Made by a program: the position numbers and the translations under genes. The notes under the pieces are model-generated. The model had not been told where the DNA came from and ran no database searches. It was given only the letters and a program-made list of their open reading frames with translations. From the IMG/VR virus record IMGVR_UViG_3300043411_000921, positions 124,001 through 188,000 of that record: a stretch of 64,000 nucleotides of DNA. The stretch is one strand, 5' to 3'. Every line of letters starts with the position of its first letter. Position 1 is the stretch's first letter. This document shows, in pieces, positions 14,919 to 64,000 of the stretch.

Positions 14919-14947
14919 TTGACCTTGGGAGGGAGCCGTGGTAGTGT
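14919..14947 (+). promoter_or_regulatory. early sigma70-like promoter
   Basis: TTGACC-N17-(TGg)TAGTGT, ATG 7 nt downstream. Confidence 0.75.
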
Positions 14948-14954
14948 TCAGAAC

Positions 14955-16331
14955 ATGAGGACTACCACAGTGAAAATGAACGCCAAGGCAAGCAAACACT
15001 CCAACTCCAACGGTCCCAACACCAAGGACCAAGTTTCCGATTTCATTCATTACAAGTTTGATCCCAGTGTTCCACCAGACGAATATGTCTTTGATCGGGA
15101 GCGGCTGGACCTGCTCCAGCAGGAACCCTTCATGGGTGGTATTTCCCTTCGCCTGCCAATGCGGGCTGATTGGAATGTTCCCACTGCTTATGTTTCTTGT
15201 GATCGTCAGGGAAACATCATTCTTGGTTACAACCCCGGCTGGATGCGGTCGCTGACTTACGAGCAGCGAAAGGGTGTTTTCAAGCATGAGGTTTTGCACA
15301 TCGCCCTGATGCACGTTGCTGGTCGTGCGGTTGCCGATCCTCGGAAAGCGCGTCTTTGGAACGTTGCCACCGACCTTGCTATCAACAGCATCATTTCCAA
15401 TGGCGGAAGCAACATGGCACCAATTGCTGATTGCCTTCTTCTGCCTGGGCGTGAGCCTAAGACGAAAGACCAAGGATTGAAGGCACTCATCAAGAGTTTC
15501 CCGCACCTGGAATCCAGTGACTTTTATATGGATGCTCTGGAGCAGTACGCTGAATCCCAGGGAAACCCAGAAGATGGCGACGGAAACATCACGATTGACA
15601 TTGGTGACGACGGTCAGTTTGATGGTCACGGCGGTTGGGGTAATATCCCCGAGGAGCTTCGAGACATCCTTCGTGAAAACGTCCGAGAACTTGTTTCTCA
15701 GGGTGTGAAGAATGCTCACCGAGCTGGGCAGTGGGGGTCCATCCCCTCTTCCACGAGTGCTCAAATTGAGGCGCTTCTCAAGCATGAACTTGATTGGAAG
15801 GCGATTCTTCGGATGTTTCTTGGTCGGGCCCGGTCGATGGATCGGAACAGCACGATCAAGCGAATCAACAAGCGTGCGCCTTACATGATGCCCGGCGTGA
15901 AGCGCAGCACCGTTGCCAACTTCCTCTGGGCGATTGACCAGTCGGGCTCTGTGTCTGACGAAAACGTGCAGCGAGGTCTTGCCGAAGCTTTCGCCTGTTC
16001 CAAGGAAGGGAAGATTGACATTGTGAACTTCGACACGGAGATTGACATGTCCAGCTTCAAGACCGTTAACAACGGGCAGGGTTTCAAATGGGAGCGGACT
16101 CGGTGCGGCGGCACTGACTTCAATGCGGTTTCTGGATTCTTGAATCGTCAGGAAAACCGTGGGAAGTATTCTGCGGTGGTGATCTTTACCGATGGTTACG
16201 CTCCGACAATGAACAATATTGTCGGGACCAAGGTTCTCTGGCTTATTACCGAAGACGGCACAATGGAAGCGCCTCGGCCTGGAGATCTCGCAGTGAAGAT
16301 GGACAAGCCGAAATCCATCAAGCGGGTCTGA
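14955..16331 (+). CDS. metallopeptidase-vWA protein (DUF2201-like)
   Basis: HEVLH, WNVATDLAIN, MIDAS DQSGS, GGTDF, FTDG. Confidence 0.9.
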   Translation: MRTTTVKMNAKASKHSNSNGPNTKDQVSDFIHYKFDPSVPPDEYVFDRERLDLLQQEPFMGGISLRLPMRADWNVPTAYVSCDRQGNIILGYNPGWMRSLTYEQRKGVFKHEVLHIALMHVAGRAVADPRKARLWNVATDLAINSIISNGGSNMAPIADCLLLPGREPKTKDQGLKALIKSFPHLESSDFYMDALEQYAESQGNPEDGDGNITIDIGDDGQFDGHGGWGNIPEELRDILRENVRELVSQGVKNAHRAGQWGSIPSSTSAQIEALLKHELDWKAILRMFLGRARSMDRNSTIKRINKRAPYMMPGVKRSTVANFLWAIDQSGSVSDENVQRGLAEAFACSKEGKIDIVNFDTEIDMSSFKTVNNGQGFKWERTRCGGTDFNAVSGFLNRQENRGKYSAVVIFTDGYAPTMNNIVGTKVLWLITEDGTMEAPRPGDLAVKMDKPKSIKRV

Positions 16332-23630: not shown

Positions 23631-23670
23631 AGAAGAGGGGAGAGGCTAAAAACCTCTCCCCTCTTCTGTT
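23631..23670. terminator. terminator between convergent genes
   Basis: agaagaggggagagg / cctctcccctcttct 15-bp stem. Confidence 0.8.
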
Positions 23671-40832: not shown

Positions 40833-41029
40833 TGTGAATCTTCATCCTCTTCCATTGGAACGATCTCATACCAATCTTCCACATAGTTTTTACTTACCAC
40901 AATGACATTGAACCCATTGGAGTCTGCTGCGAGAAGGCGAACGGTGTTTTTTAGTGGATCTTCGTCAAGATATACACGGAACCGCGAAGGAATGTTGTAC
41001 TTGTTTTTGAGCAGCGTTCCTGGTTTCAT
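40829..41029 (-). CDS. PG-x-LL array protein
   Basis: MKPGTLL, TAATG-coupled to the upstream gene. Confidence 0.65.
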   Translation of the reverse strand: MKPGTLLKNKYNIPSRFRVYLDEDPLKNTVRLLAADSNGFNVIVVSKNYVEDWYEIVPMEEDEDSQ

Positions 41030-42093
41030 TATCGGCGTGGGAAGGTGTGACGGCCACGATTGTAGGAATAAGCGGGGAAAACCGGCATGTTGACCATTGA
41101 AGTTTGAATCTCTTCGGTGAAACAAAAGCCAGCAGCTTTGATGCAATCGAGCACAGATGCCTTTTCCGTGGCACGGAACACCCAGGTGCGGGTAGAGTCC
41201 ACATAAGACCGATTGGACGCCTGGATATTCTTCTTGAGGGCTTCCACGAGCTTTGGAGTCTTGCCAGCAACCCAGGGAACGTCCAGGGTGATAACCGTGG
41301 GCCAGCAAACCACCCTTGCACCATCTCGGGCTGCTGCAATAGAGTTTTGCTGAGGATTTACAGCGATCCACTCCTCACACATCTTGATGATGTTGGGAAC
41401 ATCCCCCTCAAAGCACGGCCAATACTCCATCACAACTTCAACAAAAGCCTTGTGAGACTTCGCTGGACAAGTGAAAGTCCGACCGGAGAGCTTGGGAAAA
41501 ACAACTCCGGGAATCTTGCGCATCGCATTCCACCCAGCCTTGTTCTTGCTTCCAGTCAAACTGATAAGGCCATTTTCAAACTTCAGGGTTGCTTCACCCG
41601 TGCTGCTCTTTCCAGCAAGCACGCCAGCAAGGCCAGGATAACCCAGAGACTTGACAACTTGAATCAAGCAAGTCTTGTTTTGGGTGCTGATTCCAACGAA
41701 GGAGAGCATGAAGTCTACGATCTTGACAATGGGACGATAATCCTCACCAGCAAGATAAAACCCACTGTCGCCCTCGTTCTTTTCCTGGAGCTTCTCGTTC
41801 TTCTGCATGAGGAGTTCGAGGGTTGCAGCCCAGATGGGTTGAATGGCGAGGGGAAGTCCGTCAGGAACCACAGACATTCCATAGAGTGTGGCTGCTGAGA
41901 AATTTGCGGGAACAGTGCGAGCAAAAAGCGCGGTGTCCTTCTTCGCGCAGATGGGGCCGATGCCACGCTCCCAGGAAGCGGGATCGGTCAATGCGGCGAA
42001 GCATCGAGAACAATGACGGACATCATTGCAACTCCGAGTGATGCTCGGAAACATGTTGAGGATATCTTGAAAGCTGGTCGTGGCGTTCTTCAT
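41029..42093 (-). CDS. DUF6011-type zinc-finger early protein
   Basis: CSRC..LTDPASWERGIGPIC. Confidence 0.8.
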   Translation of the reverse strand: MKNATTSFQDILNMFPSITRSCNDVRHCSRCFAALTDPASWERGIGPICAKKDTALFARTVPANFSAATLYGMSVVPDGLPLAIQPIWAATLELLMQKNEKLQEKNEGDSGFYLAGEDYRPIVKIVDFMLSFVGISTQNKTCLIQVVKSLGYPGLAGVLAGKSSTGEATLKFENGLISLTGSKNKAGWNAMRKIPGVVFPKLSGRTFTCPAKSHKAFVEVVMEYWPCFEGDVPNIIKMCEEWIAVNPQQNSIAAARDGARVVCWPTVITLDVPWVAGKTPKLVEALKKNIQASNRSYVDSTRTWVFRATEKASVLDCIKAAGFCFTEEIQTSMVNMPVFPAYSYNRGRHTFPRR

Positions 42094-42099
42094 GACCAG

Positions 42100-42128
42100 A
42101 CTCTATCACGGCTTCTCGGGTGGGTCAA
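42100..42128 (-). promoter_or_regulatory. early sigma70-like promoter
   Basis: TTGACC-N17-(TGa)TAGAGT, ATG 6 nt downstream. Confidence 0.82.
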
Positions 42129-42134
42129 GAGCCT

Positions 42135-43322
42135 TTATCTGGCCTGTGCGATTTTTTCTGGGAGGGCTACATTCCAGAGATTTGCCTTGGCTGTCCTTGA
42201 CTTGGTAAACCCCAAAGACTCCAACTTCTTTGCCATTAGCTGAGGCTTATAGTTCGAAACATGAACCAAGCATTTCTCTTCCTTCAAAAACAACATCCTC
42301 GCTTGGATAATCTCCTGAAGGGAAGACTTGGGCTCTTTATCTGTCCAGGGTCGAAGGGAAGAAAAAAACTCCCGGTCCCCATCCTTCAAAGCTCGAACCT
42401 CTTCCAACCCAATCTTCAAATTAGGCTTGTTCTTCTTCAACCAAGAGAAGTAAATCTCATTGACCTTCTCAAAAGATGTATTGAATGCCGGATACTTCGT
42501 TACCGAGTCAATAACTTGTGTAGCTTCATCAAAAAATTCACAATAGTTTTCAAAATGTTTTAGGTAAGCGGAGCAAAGTTTTTCTAGTTGAGCACGTTCT
42601 GCCCCTTTGGCTCTGTCAGAGGAAAGAAGTCTGTGGAGAACAATGTTTCTAACGCCAACTGGGACGGGTTCGGTTTTCATTTTTTCTCTGACATGCTCGA
42701 TTGTTCCAGTTGACCAGTCAGACAGAGAGGACTTAGCCGCCATCTTTGATTTGGTCGTTGTTGTTTTTTGTGTCTTGGTTGATTTCCTTGATTTTAGTGC
42801 GTTGAGGAATTTTTCTGGTAGGTCTTGAATTTCATTCGGACAGACTTCGCCATAAGTGCCACGAGTATGTTTGCTTGGTGGAATAACAACATAACCGTCT
42901 TGGCCTCGTGTATCTACCTTGTCCGCCAAATGGGATGCAGTGTTTTTTGTCGGGGTCGATGTCCAAAACCAAAAATGCCACCCACCAGATCCAGTCCGAT
43001 AGTGAAAAGTCGAAGAAAGTTCCTTTATGATTGGGTGATCTGCCGCATCAACATCAACAACAATAAGATATTTCCCAGTTTTTTCAGATTTTCGTCCTGT
43101 TGCGAGGCCAAAGTTCATTTTGTGACTGAGAGAAAACCACTCTTCAACCTTTTCTGGTTTATTGCTGGCAATGATTTTCCAATTGTAACGAAAGAGTGGG
43201 TGTTTTCCAGGAGAAGCGCAGTTTTGTTCGCCACACGAACAAGTGTTGTTAAGCCGAATCGAATAAAGTGGAAGTATGTGAAATTTGTTTTCCAGAATGA
43301 TTTGTTTAATTGATGATGGCAT
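42135..43322 (-). CDS. bifunctional DNA primase/polymerase (Prim-Pol)
   Basis: CSCG..C.SPGKHP, NFGLATG, VVDVD, TGSGGWH, DTRGQDGYVVIPPS, GVRN. Confidence 0.9.
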   Translation of the reverse strand: MPSSIKQIILENKFHILPLYSIRLNNTCSCGEQNCASPGKHPLFRYNWKIIASNKPEKVEEWFSLSHKMNFGLATGRKSEKTGKYLIVVDVDAADHPIIKELSSTFHYRTGSGGWHFWFWTSTPTKNTASHLADKVDTRGQDGYVVIPPSKHTRGTYGEVCPNEIQDLPEKFLNALKSRKSTKTQKTTTTKSKMAAKSSLSDWSTGTIEHVREKMKTEPVPVGVRNIVLHRLLSSDRAKGAERAQLEKLCSAYLKHFENYCEFFDEATQVIDSVTKYPAFNTSFEKVNEIYFSWLKKNKPNLKIGLEEVRALKDGDREFFSSLRPWTDKEPKSSLQEIIQARMLFLKEEKCLVHVSNYKPQLMAKKLESLGFTKSRTAKANLWNVALPEKIAQAR

Positions 43323-43360
43323 TTCAACCTCAAAGTATCAGGTTGAAATGCCATCATCAA
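43310..43360. repeat. perfect 21-bp inverted repeat covering the Prim-Pol start codon and promoter
   Basis: ttgatgatggcatttcaacct-N9-aggttgaaatgccatcatcaa. Confidence 0.9.
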
Positions 43361-43575
43361 GAGACTCTTTCGACCACCGCGCCCGCAGGGATCGCCCCCG
43401 CGTCCGTGGTGGAGCCGCGAGTGCCGCCGCTCGTGCGGTAGTAGTAGGTCGTCGAGGGCGCGGGAGCGCCGACGCGCGGGGCGAAGGCCCCGCGGAGGGG
43501 CGCAGGGATGGGCTTATACAGCCCAGGGGCGATCGATGGCGAGGGCGGGGCGAGGCCTGCGGTATAGGTGCTCAT
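43357..43575 (-). CDS. small Pro-rich protein (high-GC island)
   Basis: GAGGT RBS, GC-rich codons. Confidence 0.65.
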   Translation of the reverse strand: MSTYTAGLAPPSPSIAPGLYKPIPAPLRGAFAPRVGAPAPSTTYYYRTSGGTRGSTTDAGAIPAGAVVERVS

Positions 43576-44660
43576 GGCGGCACCTCACGAGAGCGTCGGG
43601 GTCGAGGAGTCCCACCGCAGCCACAGGCCCGCGGCATAAATCCAGTACTCGGTCGTGCCGTCGAGCGTCTGGCCATTGGCCCGGCCCGCCACGGTGGCCC
43701 ACCGGATGCCGCGCGCAAATCCGACCCACCCCGTCGTGGTGGACGGCGCGCCCGCACACATCACGGGGACCGGCAGCGGCACCTCGTACCCGCTGCTAGG
43801 CAGCGCGCCGCCCTGCTCGCCTTCGGGCGGCGCCAGCCGCCCGTAGGTGCCGAAGAGCGACGCGAAGGTGACCCGCTGGTTGCTGCCAGCCCCGACGAAT
43901 CGCTTGTAGATCAGGGCGTAACCCGTCTGGAGGGCCACCCCGGCTGCCGCGTAGACCGTCAAACCCGTGGCGTTGTAGTACCCGACCCACAGGGGTGGGT
44001 CCGTGTCGCTCGGGTCGGGCGAGTCGAGGGGTACGTCGGCAAGGAGAGTGCGGACATTGCCGCCACCGCTCGGGAGGCACATGAGTCGCCAGCCGAAGTC
44101 GTCGATGTCGTCTGCCGAGATGAAGAGCCGCCCGGGCGTTGCCGTGAATGCCGACGCTGCCGAGAAAAGCTCCGTCGCGTCCGTCGCCGTAGGCAGCACC
44201 GTAGCGGTGCCACCCGTGACGAACCCCGCCGCGCTGCGAGAGATGGTCCACGCGGCATCGCTCGCGCCGCGCTGGAAGAGCCACTCGCGGCTTGAATCCG
44301 GCGAACGCACGGTGAACCACGCGGAGGTGTTGCCGAGGTTGCCCGCGCCGCTACCGCCGCTGCCGTAGGGGTTGGCGCTGAGCGGTGGGTTGGCGCTGAG
44401 CGGTGCGCCGGTGCGGTCGGTGTAGGTGGTCGCGTCCGACCATCGCGTGATGACCCACCCCGCGGAGAGCAGGGTGTCGATGAGCGCGTCGACGGCGACA
44501 GCGCCCGACGCGGGCGAGGATACGTGTGTGATAGTGGCCATGTGTCAGCTCCCGATCATCGAGGCAGCGGCGCAGATAAGCCAACGGTATGAGCCATCGG
44601 TGGGCAAGAGTTGCGCCGCCGAGATGAGGGTCTGCTGGTCGGCTGCCGTTGGGGCTGGTG
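43370..44660. other. high-GC horizontally acquired island
   Basis: Counted 60-nt lines inside are 65-80% GC versus 30-47% just to the left. Confidence 0.85.
43585..44541 (-). CDS. putative tail/receptor-binding accessory protein (high-GC island)
   Basis: Gly/Ala/Thr/Trp-rich beta protein downstream of the tail fibre; GGAG RBS. Confidence 0.7.
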   Translation of the reverse strand: MATITHVSSPASGAVAVDALIDTLLSAGWVITRWSDATTYTDRTGAPLSANPPLSANPYGSGGSGAGNLGNTSAWFTVRSPDSSREWLFQRGASDAAWTISRSAAGFVTGGTATVLPTATDATELFSAASAFTATPGRLFISADDIDDFGWRLMCLPSGGGNVRTLLADVPLDSPDPSDTDPPLWVGYYNATGLTVYAAAGVALQTGYALIYKRFVGAGSNQRVTFASLFGTYGRLAPPEGEQGGALPSSGYEVPLPVPVMCAGAPSTTTGWVGFARGIRWATVAGRANGQTLDGTTEYWIYAAGLWLRWDSSTPTLS

Positions 44661-44685
44661 TAGTGAGATTTTCCAAGTATGCCAT
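44545..44685 (-). CDS. 46-aa chimeric mini-ORF at the island junction
   Basis: MAYLENLTTPAPTAADQQTLISAAQLLPTDGSYRWLICAAASMIGS; TAGTTA at 44703-44698. Confidence 0.45.
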   Translation of the reverse strand: MAYLENLTTPAPTAADQQTLISAAQLLPTDGSYRWLICAAASMIGS

Positions 44686-44708
44686 TGTGTTAAAATCTAA
44701 CTACAGTT

Positions 44709-47111
44709 TCACCCAAAAAACACGGCTGAAAATAGCGCATAGTCGGAAATGCCTCCTCCGCTCTTGTTGACCCTCAATTCCAAAACTCTTGAAGAACCAG
44801 TGGCAACAAAAGAAGCTGTTTTGTGCGTTGGGGTTGTCTCAGTCCATGACAAAGAAGAAAGAGATGATGAGTTAACAAGATCATACAATTCCACACTTCC
44901 AGTGACTCCGGCTACGGAAGCAAAACCAATGCCTTCGAGTGTGTAGGATGGAGAATTTAGATCTGTAAAAAGAGCGTAACCCGCGATGGTGCTTGCAGAA
45001 AGGGTTGTTGTGACAACCCCAGCCAGAATTGGGATTTTACTTGAGGCAGAGAGTTCCCACTGACCAATTGTGTTGTAGTTTGCTGTAATGCCGGAACTTC
45101 CTGTCAAGAAAGGATTTCCGTTTGTAGTAGTGTTCAAAGAACCCGTTATGCCACCAAAGACTTCAAATGAACCTGTTACTTGAACGGAGCCGGAAGCAAC
45201 TCTAAAAACATCGTGCCGATTAAAACTACTATCCCCGTCCCCGACAACAAAAAGAGAGGAAGCATCTTGAATGTTGAATTTTCCGAATGCGGCTTGTGTC
45301 GTTGTGGGGTCAAGATTCCCAGCGGTTTCTCCTTCTGCGATTGTTCCAAGCCCCGCAGCGAAGCTTCCACTGCCATTCGCAATCGTTTGCCAACCTGTGG
45401 TGTGGGAGGCTGGGCCGTTCGTTAAAGTGTAGTAGCCTTCGGCGTGGGAATAGCTGCCGTTGGTTGATGAACCAACCCCTTCTGCGTGGGAATGCTCTGC
45501 GCCAGTGGTTGTTCCATTTCCCTCAGCGTGAGAAAAATTACCATTTGCTGTTGAAAAAAAGCCTTCAGCGTGCCCACCGAGAGCGTTAGATTTTGCGAAA
45601 TAACCTTCTGCGTGTGCAGCGTATGCTGCTGCTGTTGTAAACACACCTTCCGCATGGGAAAAGAACCCAGATGCTTGTGTGCTTGAACCTTCGGCGTGAG
45701 TGGCTTGGCTTGATGCAATAGTGTCTTGGCCTTCGGCGTGAGAGTTGTCACCGGATGCAATGTTTCTTATTCCCTGGGTTACGCTTCCAGTGATTTCGGC
45801 CCCCAAAGAGGCACTTAGTTTTGCAATTTCGATAGAGCTGGTCGTGTAAATGATTGTGCTGTTTATTTCAGACCAGAGGCTTGTTCCACCAGAAGAGCCA
45901 GAAATTTCCCACTGGCCGTTTGTGTTGTAGACTGTTGTGATACCCGGCCCACCAATCAAAAACGGACTACCATCGACGGTACCACTCAAAGAACCAGTGA
46001 TTTTTGAAGAGATGAACGACCCAGTTACTTCAACCGAGGTGTCATTAACTCTGAAAATATCAGATCTGAGAAAATCATCATCATCTGTTCCGTTTCCAAC
46101 AACGAACAATGAGAAATCGTTGTTGCGAAGATTATACTTTCCAACTACATTTTGTCCAGAGCCAGATGCGATTGTTCGGATACCGGAAGCGTGTGAAAAG
46201 TCGCCTGGGGTGTCGGTGTAGGAACCTTCGGCATGTGACCAGTTTCCAATAGCGTTTGTCTCAAATCCTTCAGCGTGCGATCCCACCCCAAACGCTTCTG
46301 CGCCTTCCCCTTCTGCGTGGTTATAATCGGCATGTGCTCTTGTCATTCTCCCTTCTGCGTGGGAATAATCGCCAGAAGCAATTGTCATTGTGCCTTCTGC
46401 ATGGGAACCAAGACCTGAAGAAGTCGCCATTCTCCCTTCTGCGTGGGAATTGATTCCACTGGCGAGTGTACCATCTCCCTCCGAGTGACCACCAGCACCT
46501 GATGCCGTTGTTGCAAAACCTTCTGCGTGCGAATGATTTCCAGAAGCAGTAGAATTGTACCCTTCCGAATGAGAATAGTCGCCCGAAGCGACTCCATATT
46601 GGCCTTCCGAGTGACTACACAAACCCGAAGCCACTGTTTCTTCTCCTGATGCGACAGAAGATCCGGTGGCATAGCTGCCAATTCCAGCGATCACACTAGA
46701 TCCTGTGACAACGAGACTGATTTCCCCAACAAATTCATTTCGGATTTGAACAGATCCAGTGGAGTAGGTACTACCTGAGATGTCTGAGAACCAGATTTGG
46801 GCACTGCCCCCACTTGCGCCAGAACCATCAACAGACAGGTTCCCAGAGACGTGTAGATCCCCTCCAAAAACCGCAATAGTAGGCGTGCTACCTCCCTTGC
46901 CCCCAACCGATCCAGAGACGTAGAAAAAGGCGTCAGAGCCGATTGGCGAGGTGTCAAAAATAGCAGGGTTGATATTCCCCTGGTTGGCTGGAGTTCCTTG
47001 AGCACTCAAAGGATAAACAAGAAGGCATTCGGCGGAACCCGCATTGGCTCCGCTGACAATCAGCTTGTTTACTTGAATTTGATCGGAACGAAAATCTGGT
47101 GAGTTTGGCAT
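44709..47111 (-). CDS. tail fibre / adhesin with YadA-head-like 14-aa SHAEG repeats
   Basis: Two blocks of (S/G)HAEG..T.A.G repeats and many VTGS motifs; TAGTTA upstream. Confidence 0.85.
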   Translation of the reverse strand: MPNSPDFRSDQIQVNKLIVSGANAGSAECLLVYPLSAQGTPANQGNINPAIFDTSPIGSDAFFYVSGSVGGKGGSTPTIAVFGGDLHVSGNLSVDGSGASGGSAQIWFSDISGSTYSTGSVQIRNEFVGEISLVVTGSSVIAGIGSYATGSSVASGEETVASGLCSHSEGQYGVASGDYSHSEGYNSTASGNHSHAEGFATTASGAGGHSEGDGTLASGINSHAEGRMATSSGLGSHAEGTMTIASGDYSHAEGRMTRAHADYNHAEGEGAEAFGVGSHAEGFETNAIGNWSHAEGSYTDTPGDFSHASGIRTIASGSGQNVVGKYNLRNNDFSLFVVGNGTDDDDFLRSDIFRVNDTSVEVTGSFISSKITGSLSGTVDGSPFLIGGPGITTVYNTNGQWEISGSSGGTSLWSEINSTIIYTTSSIEIAKLSASLGAEITGSVTQGIRNIASGDNSHAEGQDTIASSQATHAEGSSTQASGFFSHAEGVFTTAAAYAAHAEGYFAKSNALGGHAEGFFSTANGNFSHAEGNGTTTGAEHSHAEGVGSSTNGSYSHAEGYYTLTNGPASHTTGWQTIANGSGSFAAGLGTIAEGETAGNLDPTTTQAAFGKFNIQDASSLFVVGDGDSSFNRHDVFRVASGSVQVTGSFEVFGGITGSLNTTTNGNPFLTGSSGITANYNTIGQWELSASSKIPILAGVVTTTLSASTIAGYALFTDLNSPSYTLEGIGFASVAGVTGSVELYDLVNSSSLSSLSWTETTPTHKTASFVATGSSRVLELRVNKSGGGISDYALFSAVFFG

Positions 47112-47153
47112 AGTTTGTGTGGGTAACTATGCCAAAACAAGGCCAGAAAGGTT

Positions 47154-48020
47154 TTAGAGGATTTCGGAGGAGATCGTTGCGAGCGACCAGCCTTTCGTGG
47201 ATTTGCGGCGCCCTTTTAGAACCGCGCACAATTTTGTTGGCGCAAGACCGTACAAACGACAAAAAGCTGCCAAGCATTGAATTTCTGTTATCACAACCCC
47301 ATCGGGGCCGATCAGTTGTAATCCCAAATAGGTTTTTGAATTATGATGTTCTGTTCCCATCTTCTTACCCAAATGGGCCAAACGATTTTTTTGCTTGGAT
47401 TCTTCGGTGTGATGTTTGTTGAAATTAGGATGCTTCGAACCTTTCAACACATTTTTTGGACCAAGCTTTTTCTTTTCCGTGCCAACCAAAGTCCACCCTT
47501 TTGTGCTGGGGGCTTGTCGATTTAGCAACTTCCACAAACACTTCGGATTCAAATGGTGTTCTTCTGCAAAACTTGTAACGGAATCGACACTTGTATACAG
47601 AATTAAATCCGGTGAGAGTAGTTGAATATTGCTGTATTGTTTTCCCACCTTCTTGGATCCGTGCGGGGAAGAAGCATCTTTTCTGAGATTGTAACACTTG
47701 TTCTTACCAAAAGAAGAATCAATGTAGCGTTGTTCTACCAACAAACGATCTTCCTTGGTACCACCAACGACTTCCAGAACCTCAAACACGAATACCTCTT
47801 CCCCGCATTTGTCAAAATCGGCTTGCAGATAACGGTTAGAATGCTTCCCTCTTCTTAGGGAAGCGGTGTGCTGATTCCAGCGGACCTTGAAGCATTTTGC
47901 CGAACCAACATAGACTCTTTCGTTGAGTTTGTTTCTGAGTCTATACACACCGCCTTCATTCGATTTCCCTCCGAACTTGTATTCCACAGGACGTAACCTT
48001 TCATGGAATACATAGTTCAA
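47154..48020 (-). mobile_element. free-standing GIY-YIG homing endonuclease
   Basis: GVY..YVGS..R, NUMOD3-like HTEESKQK, two SPD/GPD..KGW repeats. Confidence 0.9.
47156..47184. repeat. 29-bp direct repeat (copy of the phoH 3' end)
   Basis: 28/29 identical to 48043-48071. Confidence 0.9.
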
Positions 48021-48040: not shown

Positions 48041-49432
48041 TCAGAGGATTTCGGAGGAGATTGTTGCGAGCAAACTCCTTTCCCCGCGCAAAAATGTCAC
48101 ATGTCCGGCAATATCTTGATCTTTGAAGCGTTCAATAACAATTGAGAGACCATTGGAAACTGAGTCAACGTAGGTGTTGTCGATCTGCTCCAAGTCTCCA
48201 GTCAAAACAATCTTGGTGTTTTCTCCAACACGAGTCAATATTGTTTTCATTTCGTGCAGGTTCGTGTTTTGAGCTTCGTCAATAATCACGAAAGCGTTGG
48301 CGATGGAACGTCCACGAATGAAGGTCATTGCTTGAACTTCAATGATTCCTTCGTCGAAGTAACTCTGAAGAACTTGCTCGTCATGTCGTGGTTGTTTTTT
48401 CTTTCCACCTTCTTGCATTGAATTGCCGATGAGAAAGCGAAGGTTGTCTTTGATTGGAGCAAGCCACGGTTCCAGTTTTTCATTCAAATCTCCTGGAAGG
48501 AACCCAACGTCTTTTCCGAGGGGCATGATTGGACGGCAGATGAGCAGACTTCTGTACCGTTTTGTGTTCAAGACTTGTTCAAGTCCAGCGTTGATTGCGC
48601 TAAGTGTTTTTCCCACACCGGCTTTTCCAGCAAGAGTGACAAGTTTCACGGCTGGGTCAAAGAGAAGGTCGGCAGCAAATTCTTGTTCTTTGTTTCTTGG
48701 TTGAAGTTTTCCAGGAGAAGGGGTCAATTGTCGCAATGGTTTGTTTTTGGACACGAACCTTGCAACTGCGGACTGTTGTCCGTCTTTGATAACAACAAAC
48801 TGGTTAGGATGAAGGTCTTGTTGGAGGTCTTCGGGAAGTGTGTAATCATTTTTGTTGTCATGGAAGTCATCAACCACAGTTTCATCGCGGCTGGAAACAT
48901 CAATCGTTTTTACGCCCGAGTAAAGACTGTTCACGCTTGTTGCGACATTGAACTTACGGTAATCCTCACAGGGAATTCCGAGGGCCTGAGCTTTCAATCG
49001 AAGGATTGTATCTCTTGTGACAAGGAATGCGGTTTCACCAGCAGCTTTTGCCATATCCAAGTAGTTTTGACAGAAGTGAACAATGGTGTTGTCACCGCTC
49101 TTCTTTGTCTCCAATTCAGATGGCAAACCGATTGCTGTTTTCTCATCGGCACACAAATCGGAGAGTGCAAGGATACGGAGGGTTCCCAACTTCTTTCCGA
49201 GTGGAATTCCAGCTTTGAAATCTTTGTGGACCTTGGTCAAGTCAGCAAGTTTTCTGACAACTTCTCTGGCGTTTCTGCCGACTTCATCTTGACGGTCTTT
49301 GTGTCTGTCAAGTTCCTCCAGCACAATGAGAGGAATCACCAAGTCATGCTCTTCGAAACCAAACAGGCTGTTGCTGTCAGTCAACAGAACGTTTGTGTCA
49401 AGAATGTAAGTCTTGCGGGCTTTTTTTGTCAT
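48041..49432 (-). CDS. phoH: PIN-PhoH (PhoH2) protein
   Basis: ILDTNVLL, EELD, GKAGVGKT, GFLPG, IRGRS, IDEAQN, GDLEQID. Confidence 0.95.
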   Translation of the reverse strand: MTKKARKTYILDTNVLLTDSNSLFGFEEHDLVIPLIVLEELDRHKDRQDEVGRNAREVVRKLADLTKVHKDFKAGIPLGKKLGTLRILALSDLCADEKTAIGLPSELETKKSGDNTIVHFCQNYLDMAKAAGETAFLVTRDTILRLKAQALGIPCEDYRKFNVATSVNSLYSGVKTIDVSSRDETVVDDFHDNKNDYTLPEDLQQDLHPNQFVVIKDGQQSAVARFVSKNKPLRQLTPSPGKLQPRNKEQEFAADLLFDPAVKLVTLAGKAGVGKTLSAINAGLEQVLNTKRYRSLLICRPIMPLGKDVGFLPGDLNEKLEPWLAPIKDNLRFLIGNSMQEGGKKKQPRHDEQVLQSYFDEGIIEVQAMTFIRGRSIANAFVIIDEAQNTNLHEMKTILTRVGENTKIVLTGDLEQIDNTYVDSVSNGLSIVIERFKDQDIAGHVTFLRGERSLLATISSEIL

Positions 49433-63630: not shown

Positions 63631-63966
63631 ATGGAAAACGAATACAATCTCACCCCTGGAAAAGTCTTTTCAGTCGAACCAAACATTTCAAAAAATCTAT
63701 TCAAAGCCTTTCATAAACCGGGAACGATGTCATGTGCCATCATGGCACATGCTCAATTGTCGCCACCTGGATTTGCTGAGAATCTTGTGAAAACTGGGAA
63801 GCTGTTGGGTGGAGCTGATGCGATTACCTTCCTTGGTTTTGTGGATGATTCATTCGAGAAAGGTTTGTTTGAAAATTCTCGTGGAGAAAGGGCAGAAGTT
63901 TTCTTGGGACCAGAGATTGACCCACACCTCGAACTTGTTTTAACGGACAAGGCAGAAACTCCTTGA
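63631..63966 (+). CDS. hypothetical protein (FLGF..NSRG family)
   Basis: LTPGKVF; ITFLGF..GLFENSRG. Confidence 0.7.
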   Translation: MENEYNLTPGKVFSVEPNISKNLFKAFHKPGTMSCAIMAHAQLSPPGFAENLVKTGKLLGGADAITFLGFVDDSFEKGLFENSRGERAEVFLGPEIDPHLELVLTDKAETP

Positions 63967-63991
63967 CCGGATCGTGGGAGTGTGGTAGAGT
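63963..63991 (+). promoter_or_regulatory. early sigma70-like promoter
   Basis: TTGACC-N17-(TGg)TAGAGT, ATG at 63998. Confidence 0.8.
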
Positions 63992-64000
63992 CCACACATG

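What the first reader, a model, noticed from the sequence alone, without database searches (positions are those of the whole stretch)
43310..43360. Perfect 21-bp palindrome holding the Prim-Pol promoter and start codon, at the GC-island edge
Seen: arms at 43310-43330 and 43340-43360 with a 9-nt loop. On the minus strand the first arm carries the upstream stop codon and a -35 (TTGATG). The loop carries TGaTACTTT at 17-nt spacing, and the second arm carries the RBS region and ATG. Inference: late read-through mRNA from the tail operon would fully occlude Prim-Pol translation, whereas the internal early transcript lacks the first arm and is translated. Alternatives are a cruciform origin or a scar from island insertion.
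Basis: partly seen in the sequence, partly recalled or inferred. Interest (0 to 1): 0.6.

Follow-up and report, generated by a model that had tools for sequence, protein, structure and literature searches.

The report
Promoter-and-start-codon hairpin before phage Prim-Pol
A perfect 21-bp inverted repeat in a 241-kb phage genome holds the promoter and start codon of a primase-polymerase gene, and most likely stops that gene being translated from late tail-fibre messages that run into it, a mirror image of a control known from phage T4.

Summary
The palindrome is real: arms 43310-43330 and 43340-43360, 9-nt loop. It is the longest perfect hairpin in the 241-kb phage record. As sense (minus-strand) RNA it folds at -35 kcal/mol (z -8.5).

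The promoter-like site also fits a promoter class I derived from this genome (TTGACC-N14-TGnTAnnGT, start codon 6-7 nt on).

The upstream genes (YadA-like fibre p800, s46, p318, s72) follow a TAGTTA motif. That motif also precedes the sheath, tube, major head and terminase genes, so they are probably late genes.

A second hairpin at 47104-47136 hides the p800 start codon and contains TAGTTA. The late cassette is therefore bracketed by two such hairpins.

Seventeen near-identical strains from other metagenomes keep the stem through U-A, U·G and C-G states of one pair. This is suggestive, not significant.

Relatives with 81-89% identical Prim-Pol have the GC-rich cassette but no palindrome, so it is not an insertion scar. 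More distant relatives have a weaker hairpin of the same layout.

Best reading: a translational insulator of the T4 gene e / I-TevI type with reversed temporal polarity. No transcript 5' end or translation data exist.

The parts
43340..43360 (-). 5' arm of the hairpin in the sense of the genes. It holds the last base of the s72 coding sequence, the s72 stop TGA (43359-43357), a second in-frame TGA, the -35-like TTGATG (43360-43355) and the 14-nt spacer. The final T is the T of the extended -10 'TG'.
   Evidence: promoter-class score
43331..43339 (-). 9-nt loop GATACTTTG. With the preceding T it forms the extended -10 TGaTACTTT (hexamer 43337-43332). It is invariant in all 18 strain sequences.
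43310..43330 (-). 3' arm. It holds the AGG of the SD-like GAGG (43331-43328), the Prim-Pol ATG (43322-43320) and codons 2-4. The predicted transcript start, 7-9 nt after the -10, is 43325-43323, so the internal mRNA lacks the whole 5' arm.
42135..43322 (-). Prim-Pol gene, 395 aa
   Evidence: PF09250 E 2.3e-23; PHROGs DNA primase families
43357..43575 (-). s72, a 72-aa ORF and the last gene of the GC-rich cassette. Homologues sit at the same position in L003, L004, L005 and L007.
43585..44541 (-). p318, a 318-aa ORF of unknown function and the core of the hypervariable GC-rich cassette. It is 68-92% identical among strains whose Prim-Pol DNA is about 99.5% identical, and 80% identical to a 74%-GC phage contig.
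44545..44703 (-). s46, a 46-aa ORF (44545-44685), with a TAGTTA motif (44703-44698) 12 nt upstream of its ATG. In other strains 44527-44713 is replaced by 41 nt.
44709..47111 (-). p800, an 800-aa fibre-like protein with repeats like those of YadA/Hep_Hag trimeric adhesins
   Evidence: YadA_head (faint)
47104..47136 (-). Hairpin A: 12-bp stem and 9-nt loop. The 3' arm holds the p800 ATG (47111-47109). The TAGTTA motif (47129-47124) spans the end of the 5' arm and the first loop base. A near-identical element precedes the gene just upstream of the terminase large-subunit gene (genome 227935-227957).
42094..42128 (-). Reference example of the phage's leaderless-geometry promoter class, next door: TTGACC (42128-42123), 17 nt, TG-extended TAGAGT (42105-42100), 6 nt, then the ATG of the DUF6011 gene (42093)
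43373..44870 (.). GC-rich (about 70%) hypervariable cassette. Strains are about 100% identical right of about 43372 and left of about 44870, and 40-90% identical in between.

Best explanation
The palindrome acts as an RNA hairpin on the sense (minus-strand) transcript.

The fibre cassette p800-s46-p318-s72 is transcribed late from TAGTTA-type promoters, and those messages run into Prim-Pol. On them the full 21-bp stem forms. It buries the GAGG ribosome-binding site, the AUG and codons 2-4, so Prim-Pol is not translated efficiently. A stem this long may also be cut by RNase III or slow the polymerase.

Prim-Pol's own promoter lies inside the same sequence: the -35 and spacer are the 5' arm, and the TG-extended -10 is the loop. 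Its transcript starts about 43325-43323, lacks the 5' arm, is unstructured, and is translated as a nearly leaderless mRNA.

Hairpin A does the reverse job at the other end of the cassette. It hides the p800 start on read-through from the upstream PhoH and endonuclease genes, and a TAGTTA promoter inside it gives a free late message.

Shown: the structure, its position, its variants, and the motif classes. Inferred: that the motifs are promoters, their timing, read-through, and the effect on translation.
For: 1. The stem is the strongest start-codon hairpin among about 324 ORFs: -35.4 kcal/mol in 62 nt against a background of -11.2 +/- 4.3. Truncated transcripts fold at 0 to -0.2 kcal/mol.

2. 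An in-genome promoter class exists: TTGACC-N14-TGnTAnnGT with ATG/GTG 6-7 nt downstream, 11 sites. On a matrix built from those 11 sites, the Prim-Pol site scores 12.15 bits (61 genome positions score as high, 17-42 in controls). The natural variant with TTGACG scores 16.7 bits (24 genome positions, 0-3 in controls). By my arithmetic, a chance hit at this one pre-specified place is about 4e-4.

3. Relatives L025 and L038 have TTGAAT-N14-TGgTATTAT at the same place without any hairpin. The promoter is therefore the conserved element.

4. TAGTTA occurs only 27 times in 241 kb, and at least 22 copies lie 5-45 nt upstream of ORF starts in the sense orientation. Those ORFs include tail sheath, tail tube, major head protein, an adaptor-like protein and the terminase pair, and also p800 and s46.

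5. Hairpin A has the same layout.

6. L004 (-17.1 kcal/mol, z -4.0) and L003 (-11.8, z -1.8) pair the AUG with the region between a -35-like and a -10-like hexamer, and the -10-like hexamer sits in the loop.

7. Across 18 strain sequences, the 5:17' pair runs U-A, U·G, C-G. A second pair is C-G or U·G. 99% of cells are paired.

8. The mechanism is established for T4 e, soc, I-TevI, segB and Aeh1 mobE (PMC3014915, PMC2988022).
Against: - No transcript 5' end, timing or translation data exist. The one RNA run laid had no contig across the palindrome.
- The generic sigma-70 scan does not call the site, and the 12.15-bit score of the window's own variant is only modestly above controls.
- The -10 lies 9 nt from the ATG, against 6-7 nt in the class. 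The internal mRNA would therefore have a 1-3 nt leader and no SD, which may translate poorly.
- The s72 stop codon sits at the base of the stem, so terminating ribosomes should melt roughly the lower 12-14 bp. Occlusion may be partial.
- Covariation is not significant: 5 distinct rows, and 130 of 500 shuffles do as well.
- 21 perfect pairs are far more than occlusion needs.
- The close relatives L010, L025 and L027 manage without it.
Confidence: 0.5

Rival explanations
1. End-of-operon RNA element only. The hairpin serves the upstream late cassette as a terminator or attenuator, a 3'-end stabiliser or an RNase III processing site. Its overlap with the Prim-Pol start is incidental.
For: It begins 1 nt before the s72 stop codon. 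A 21-bp perfect duplex is in the size range of RNase III substrates (own knowledge). PeSL stem-loops embedded in promoters act as terminators in T4-type phages (PMC2839356). Different small hairpins sit in the same intergenic space in L010, L027 and L007.
Against: No U-tract follows the stem, and the terminator scan does not list it. The genome's other strong intergenic hairpins have GC-rich stems, whereas this one is AU-rich. This reading does not explain why the AUG is paired in L003, L004 and hairpin A as well.
Confidence: 0.15
2. DNA-level product. The perfect repeat arose, and is re-perfected, by intramolecular template switching (quasi-palindrome correction). It persists as a nearly neutral or recombination-prone border of the exchanged cassette.
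For: - Polymorphism is dense: 4 segregating sites in 51 nt against 9 in the other 1175 nt of the gene (Fisher p 0.0014).
- Two different perfect palindromes exist, with TTGATG or TTGACG.
- L035 and L036 have Prim-Pol genes that differ only at the paired position.
- Spacer and start region share nothing with L025, although the promoter hexamers align. This suggests an abrupt event.
- All strain mosaics break within about 15-50 nt of the palindrome.
Against: - The sharp border is equally explained by crossovers in the conserved 3' end of s72.
- Measured against synonymous-site diversity, the excess polymorphism is weak (my estimate).
- This reading explains origin, not retention across at least 10 studies.
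- It is compatible with the main model rather than exclusive of it.
Confidence: 0.15
3. Translational coupling. Prim-Pol is made mainly from the late polycistronic mRNA, and only when a ribosome terminating at the s72 stop opens the stem and frees GAGG-N5-AUG.
For: The stop codon lies at stem positions 2-4, and an SD with good spacing is present only in the read-through form. Coupling by stem melting is known from MS2 coat and replicase (own knowledge).
Against: A terminating ribosome would leave an 8-9 bp residual stem that still covers the SD. Relatives express Prim-Pol from a leaderless-type promoter with no SD. There is no evident reason to tie a replication enzyme to a small fibre-cassette protein.
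Confidence: 0.1
4. Single-strand initiation or origin hairpin recognised by the adjacent Prim-Pol (cruciform origin).
For: The palindrome lies at the primase-polymerase gene. The DNA hairpin is stable on either strand, -23 kcal/mol. RSF1010 RepB' uses hairpin ssi sites (own knowledge).
Against: It is absent from phages with 81-89% identical Prim-Pol. The commonest haplotype is a wobble only on the sense strand and a C·A mismatch on the other. There is no second copy in the genome and no GC-skew turn here.
Confidence: 0.05
5. Scar left by insertion of the GC-rich island.
For: It sits 13 nt from the GC-rich edge.
Against: The gene order p800-p318-s72-PrimPol is ancestral (L003, L004, L007). L010, L025-L027 and L038 have GC-rich DNA upstream but no palindrome. 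Different cassette alleles share the same palindrome.
Confidence: 0.03

Closest known systems
T4-type start-site sequestration with a promoter inside the hairpin (genes e, soc, I-TevI, segB; Aeh1 mobE)
   Same: A stable hairpin buries the ribosome-binding site and start codon on read-through transcripts. A promoter placed in or next to the 5' arm gives a transcript that cannot fold (PMC3014915, PMC2988022). Hairpin A at p800 matches this case directly: a late-type motif inside the hairpin and a structural gene behind it.
   Different: The known cases are all late genes silenced on early or middle read-through (PMC2988022). Here the protected gene is a replication gene behind a late cassette, and its promoter is of the host-like TTGACC/TGnTAnnnT class. 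The stem is 21 perfect pairs, the internal mRNA would be nearly leaderless, and the upstream stop codon lies in the stem. Nothing has been tested experimentally.
PeSL composite promoter-stem-loop cassettes of T4-type phages (RB49, phi1)
   Same: A sigma-70-like promoter is combined with a stem-loop, with the SD and start codon at the 3' end. The element sits at the border of variable, exchanged genes (PMC2839356, PMC4122927).
   Different: PeSLs are a repeated family with a conserved GGGG/CCCC stem placed between -35 and -10. They act as terminators and as homology patches. This palindrome is single-copy, AU-rich and includes the start codon. A role in recombination is not shown.
Lambda sib retroregulation and RNase III-dependent control
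   Same: Only the read-through transcript forms the complete long duplex (own knowledge).
   Different: sib lies downstream of int and acts through 3' decay. No evidence for RNase III is available here.

Membership tests
T4-type TIR-sequestering hairpin with internal promoter | Stable RNA hairpin that pairs the SD and/or start codon of the regulated gene | tested here: met
   21 bp cover GAGG, AUG and codons 2-4; -35.4 kcal/mol, z -8.5
T4-type TIR-sequestering hairpin with internal promoter | Promoter placed so that its transcript lacks the 5' arm | tested here: inconclusive
   Motif evidence only: 12.15 bits (16.7 in the TTGACG strains) on a matrix from 11 in-genome sites. The truncated RNA is unstructured. 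No 5' ends have been mapped.
T4-type TIR-sequestering hairpin with internal promoter | Co-directional upstream transcription of another temporal class reads into the hairpin | tested here: inconclusive
   TAGTTA motifs lie before p800 and s46 and before the virion genes. No other terminator-like site lies between s72 and Prim-Pol. Timing is inferred.
T4-type TIR-sequestering hairpin with internal promoter | Translation differs between long and short transcripts | not testable with these tools
   Needs reporter fusions or ribosome profiling
PeSL promoter-stem-loop cassette | Repeated family of conserved motifs across the genome | tested here: not met
   The 171-nt query matches only itself and its own inverse in the 241-kb record. 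The hairpin A type has just two copies.
PeSL promoter-stem-loop cassette | Flanks variable or exchanged genes | tested here: met
   Strain mosaics break within about 15-50 nt of the palindrome
Intrinsic (rho-independent) terminator | GC-rich stem followed by a U-tract | tested here: not met
   Not listed by the terminator scan. The stem is 38% GC and no T-run follows it on either strand.
Primase ssi/origin hairpin | Conserved together with the primase gene | tested here: not met
   Absent from L010, L025-L027 and L038, whose Prim-Pol is 81-89% identical
Known RNA families (Rfam 15) | Match reaching the gathering score | tested here: not met
   Only sub-threshold generic hairpin (miRNA precursor) hits, 16-26 bits against cut-offs of 55-135

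The most novel reading that the evidence does not exclude
A horizontally exchanged late tail-fibre cassette, nested co-directionally inside an early replication-gene array, is insulated at both ends by promoter-plus-start-codon hairpins of opposite temporal polarity. The downstream, perfect one also serves as the fixed border, or hot spot, for repeated import of GC-rich alleles from unrelated high-GC phages.
Probability: 0.2. Interest if true: 0.6.

Novelty: new variant of a known kind. Interest (0 to 1): 0.45.

Why it matters
If correct, the hairpin-with-internal-promoter logic known from T4 late genes would also work in the other direction. It would shield an early or middle replication gene from late read-through, in an uncultured jumbo phage found in wastewater and freshwater.

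It would also show how a frequently swapped host-range-type cassette can sit inside a replication-gene array without disturbing expression of its neighbours.

The two promoter motif classes found on the way (TAGTTA, and TTGACC-N14-TGnTAnnGT with leaderless geometry) give a testable transcription map for this phage group. They also hint at a host that translates leaderless mRNAs.

Tried and rejected
- Megablast and blastn of the region against 50,697 phage records: no match.
- Exact search for the arm in IMG/VR: none beyond the own record.
- Generic sigma-70 and terminator scan: calls neither the promoter nor a terminator at the palindrome.
- Genome-wide screens for further start-codon hairpins: only the p800 hairpin and a weaker 7-bp twin before the terminase pair stand out, so this is not a general habit of the genome.
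- Covariation test on 18 strain sequences: one pair changed on both sides, not significant.
- AlphaFold2 model of p318 from 11 sequences: mean pLDDT 40.7. It was too poor to search with, so no fold search was run. PDB sequence search for p318: nothing. Atlas neighbours carry only an automatic 'minor tail protein' label.
- Rfam: no family.
- RNA contigs of one metatranscriptome: none crosses the palindrome, and contigs cannot show 5' ends.
- 'Scar of island insertion' rejected, because relatives have the cassette without the palindrome.
- A telomere-resolution site was considered and dropped, because of the 9-nt spacer, the single copy and the internal position.
- The large protein searches were not needed and were not used.

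Full report
**Observation**

The window is bases 124001-188000 of a 241,399-bp IMG/VR virus record of about 46% GC. The repeat finder confirms arms 43310-43330 and 43340-43360: 21 nt, 100% complementary, 9 nt apart.

All genes in this stretch are on the minus strand:
- PIN-PhoH, 48041-49432
- GIY-YIG endonuclease, 47154-48020
- p800, 44709-47111
- s46, 44545-44685
- p318, 43585-44541
- s72, 43357-43575
- Prim-Pol, 42135-43322 (PF09250, E 2.3e-23)
- a DUF6011 protein, 41029-42093

In gene orientation the first arm holds the s72 stop codon (TGA, 43359-43357) and TTGATG (43360-43355). Seventeen nt further on is TACTTT (43337-43332), preceded by TG. The second arm holds most of GAGG (43331-43328) and the Prim-Pol ATG (43322-43320).

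GC content rises from about 0.42 to 0.63-0.74 immediately to the right.

The hairpin is the longest perfect one in the whole record. It is by far the strongest structure at any candidate start codon: -35.4 kcal/mol in 62 nt against a background of -11.2 +/- 4.3. In 81 nt it has z -8.5.

**The surroundings**

The order p800 - p318 - s72 - Prim-Pol - DUF6011 is conserved in L003 and L004 (39-41% GC, Prim-Pol 52% identical) and in L007 (48% GC). The GC-rich segment is therefore an allelic replacement, not an insertion.

Its nearest relatives (p318 79%, s72 82%) lie on contigs that are 72-74% GC throughout.

Seventeen contigs from other metagenomes carry Prim-Pol genes that differ from the window at only 2-6 of 1188 bases. 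Between these strains the DNA is about 100% identical right of about 43372 and left of about 44870, but only 40-90% identical in between. Their p318 proteins are 68-92% identical to the window's, no closer than the 74%-GC phage copy at 80%. The cassette is hypervariable and seems to be exchanged repeatedly.

p800 has repeats like YadA/Hep_Hag adhesins, so it is a fibre-like protein. p318 has no family. Its Atlas neighbours are phage proteins, one cluster labelled minor tail protein.

**Two promoter-like motif classes in this genome**

1. TAGTTA occurs only 27 times on both strands. At least 22 copies lie 5-45 nt upstream of an ORF start in the sense orientation. The ORFs behind them include tail sheath, tail tube, major head protein, an adaptor-like protein and the gene pair ending in terminase large subunit. 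They also include p800 (47129-47124) and s46 (44703-44698). I infer a late-promoter motif, and that p800 to s72 is a late cassette.

2. Eleven sites read TTGACC-N14-TGnTAnnGT with ATG or GTG 6-7 nt downstream. This is the geometry of leaderless mRNAs. One of them drives the DUF6011 gene next door.

On a matrix built from those 11 sites, the Prim-Pol site scores 12.15 bits. That score is reached by 61 genome positions and by 17-42 positions in control sequences. The natural variant with TTGACG scores 16.7 bits, reached by 24 genome positions and 0-3 control positions.

L025 and L038 (Prim-Pol DNA about 89% identical) have TTGAAT-N14-TGgTATTAT at the same place and no hairpin. The promoter is the conserved element, and the palindrome is an addition in one sub-lineage.

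**A second hairpin**

At 47104-47136 a 12-bp stem with a 9-nt loop pairs the p800 ATG. The TAGTTA motif spans the end of its 5' arm and the first loop base. A near-identical element precedes the 153-aa gene upstream of the terminase large-subunit gene.

This is the T4 gene e / soc / I-TevI arrangement: a late gene hidden on read-through RNA, with a late promoter inside the hairpin (PMC3014915, PMC2988022). L003 and L004 start p800 with ATGGCA and have no such hairpin.

**Variation of the palindrome**

The 18 strain sequences fall into five haplotypes:
- U-A at stem pair 5:17' (perfect): the window and 4 others
- U·G at that pair: 7 sequences
- C-G at that pair (perfect again): 3 sequences
- C-G there plus U·G at pair 11:11': 2 sequences
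- An A·C mismatch at pair 4:18': 1 sequence

The loop never varies. A fourth population shows the arm-1 change at 43356.

Both wobble states pair only in the sense-strand RNA. The formal count gives 99% of cells paired and one pair changed on both sides. With five distinct rows this is not significant: 130 of 500 shuffles do as well.

Polymorphism is denser in the 51 nt than in the rest of the gene (4 against 9 sites, p 0.0014). L035 and L036 have Prim-Pol genes that differ only at the paired position. This pattern could reflect selection for pairing. It could equally reflect templated correction of a quasi-palindrome, or recombination.

**Relatives**

L010 (Prim-Pol 81% identical) and L025-L027 and L038 have GC-rich DNA upstream but no long palindrome. 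The palindrome is therefore younger than the cassette, which removes the 'scar' reading.

L004 and L003 fold into imperfect hairpins of the same layout: the -35-like hexamer in the 5' arm, TATACT in the loop, and the AUG paired in the 3' arm. L004 folds at -17.1 kcal/mol (z -4.0) and L003 at -11.8 (z -1.8). Their -10-like hexamer lies 6 nt from the ATG, which is the leaderless geometry.

**Mechanism**

I consider a translational insulator the most likely reading (0.5). Late messages from the TAGTTA promoters cross s72 and form the full stem, which hides the Prim-Pol initiation region. Prim-Pol's own promoter starts inside the 3' arm, at about 43325-43323, and gives an unstructured RNA (0 to -0.2 kcal/mol).

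Weak points:
- The start would leave a 1-3 nt leader without an SD.
- The -10 lies 9 nt from the ATG rather than 6-7 nt.
- Ribosomes stopping at the s72 stop codon at the base of the stem should open part of it.
- 21 perfect pairs exceed what occlusion needs.
- No 5' ends or expression data could be obtained.

The rivals are listed separately: an end-of-operon element or RNase III site, a DNA-level template-switch product or recombination border, translational coupling, a priming hairpin, and an insertion scar.

**Comparison and novelty**

The element works like the T4 hairpins but with reversed temporal polarity, and all documented T4-type cases concern late genes (PMC2988022). It resembles PeSLs in combining a promoter, a stem-loop and a variable-region border (PMC2839356, PMC4122927). 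It fails their defining feature of being a repeated family. Rfam has no matching family.

I rate it a new variant of a known kind, of moderate interest.

**Limits**

Noticed in passing
window 43373-44870: A hypervariable cassette of about 70% GC (C-terminus of p800, s46, p318, s72) sits in a 46%-GC phage. Strains with about 99.5% identical flanks carry p318 alleles only 68-92% identical. These are as distant from each other as from a copy on a 74%-GC phage contig (L005). This suggests repeated allele import from high-GC phages, possibly ones sharing the host.
   Followed up: partly
whole genome; e.g. window 47129-47124, 44703-44698, 4018-4013, 61363-61358: TAGTTA is strongly avoided (27 copies in 241 kb). 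Nearly every copy lies just upstream of an ORF, including the sheath, tube, major head and terminase genes, so it is a likely late-promoter motif. In some cases the start codon is only 5-6 nt downstream.
   Followed up: partly
whole genome; e.g. window 42128-42091, 14919-14957, 63963-64000: A promoter class TTGACC-N14-TGnTAnnGT has ATG/GTG 6-7 nt downstream, which is leaderless geometry (11 clear sites). Together with the high-GC donors of the tail cassette, this hints at a host in which leaderless translation is common. The host was not determined.
   Followed up: partly
window 47104-47136 and genome 227935-227957 (L043:935-957): Twin elements CATAGTT-ACCCAnnAA-AACTATGCC hold the start codons of p800 and of the 153-aa gene before the terminase large-subunit gene. 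Both proteins begin Met-Pro.
   Followed up: partly
window 47154-48020: The GIY-YIG/NUMOD homing-endonuclease gene seems strain-specific. Contigs from three other studies match up to 47184 and then continue with unrelated sequence.
   Followed up: partly
window 45043-45894: One population (X2) carries p800 with an 852-nt in-frame-length deletion, which suggests repeat-number variation in the fibre protein.
   Followed up: no
window 44527-44713: s46 and its TAGTTA motif are replaced by 41 other bases in two populations (X5, X8; also the L018-type contigs).
   Followed up: partly
window 43357-43372: The last five codons of s72 encode VERVS with AT-rich codons, where high-GC relatives encode VERVT with GC-rich codons. 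GC-rich homology ends exactly at 43373. Two in-frame TGA codons end the gene.
   Followed up: partly
window 23631-23667; genome 203326-203360 and 205057-205094: Perfect GC-rich stems of 15-17 bp without clear T-runs. The window copy (23631-23667) lies between convergent genes. They are probably bidirectional terminators.
   Followed up: no
window 48041-49432: A PhoH-like ATPase is fused to an N-terminal PIN domain, directly upstream of the endonuclease and the fibre cassette.
   Followed up: no
L015:2960-3000: A 40%-identical Prim-Pol relative has a 6-bp hairpin (GGTTGG/CCAACC). The AT of its ATGCCA start lies in the loop, and the G begins the 3' arm. This is another structure at this gene's start.
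   Followed up: no
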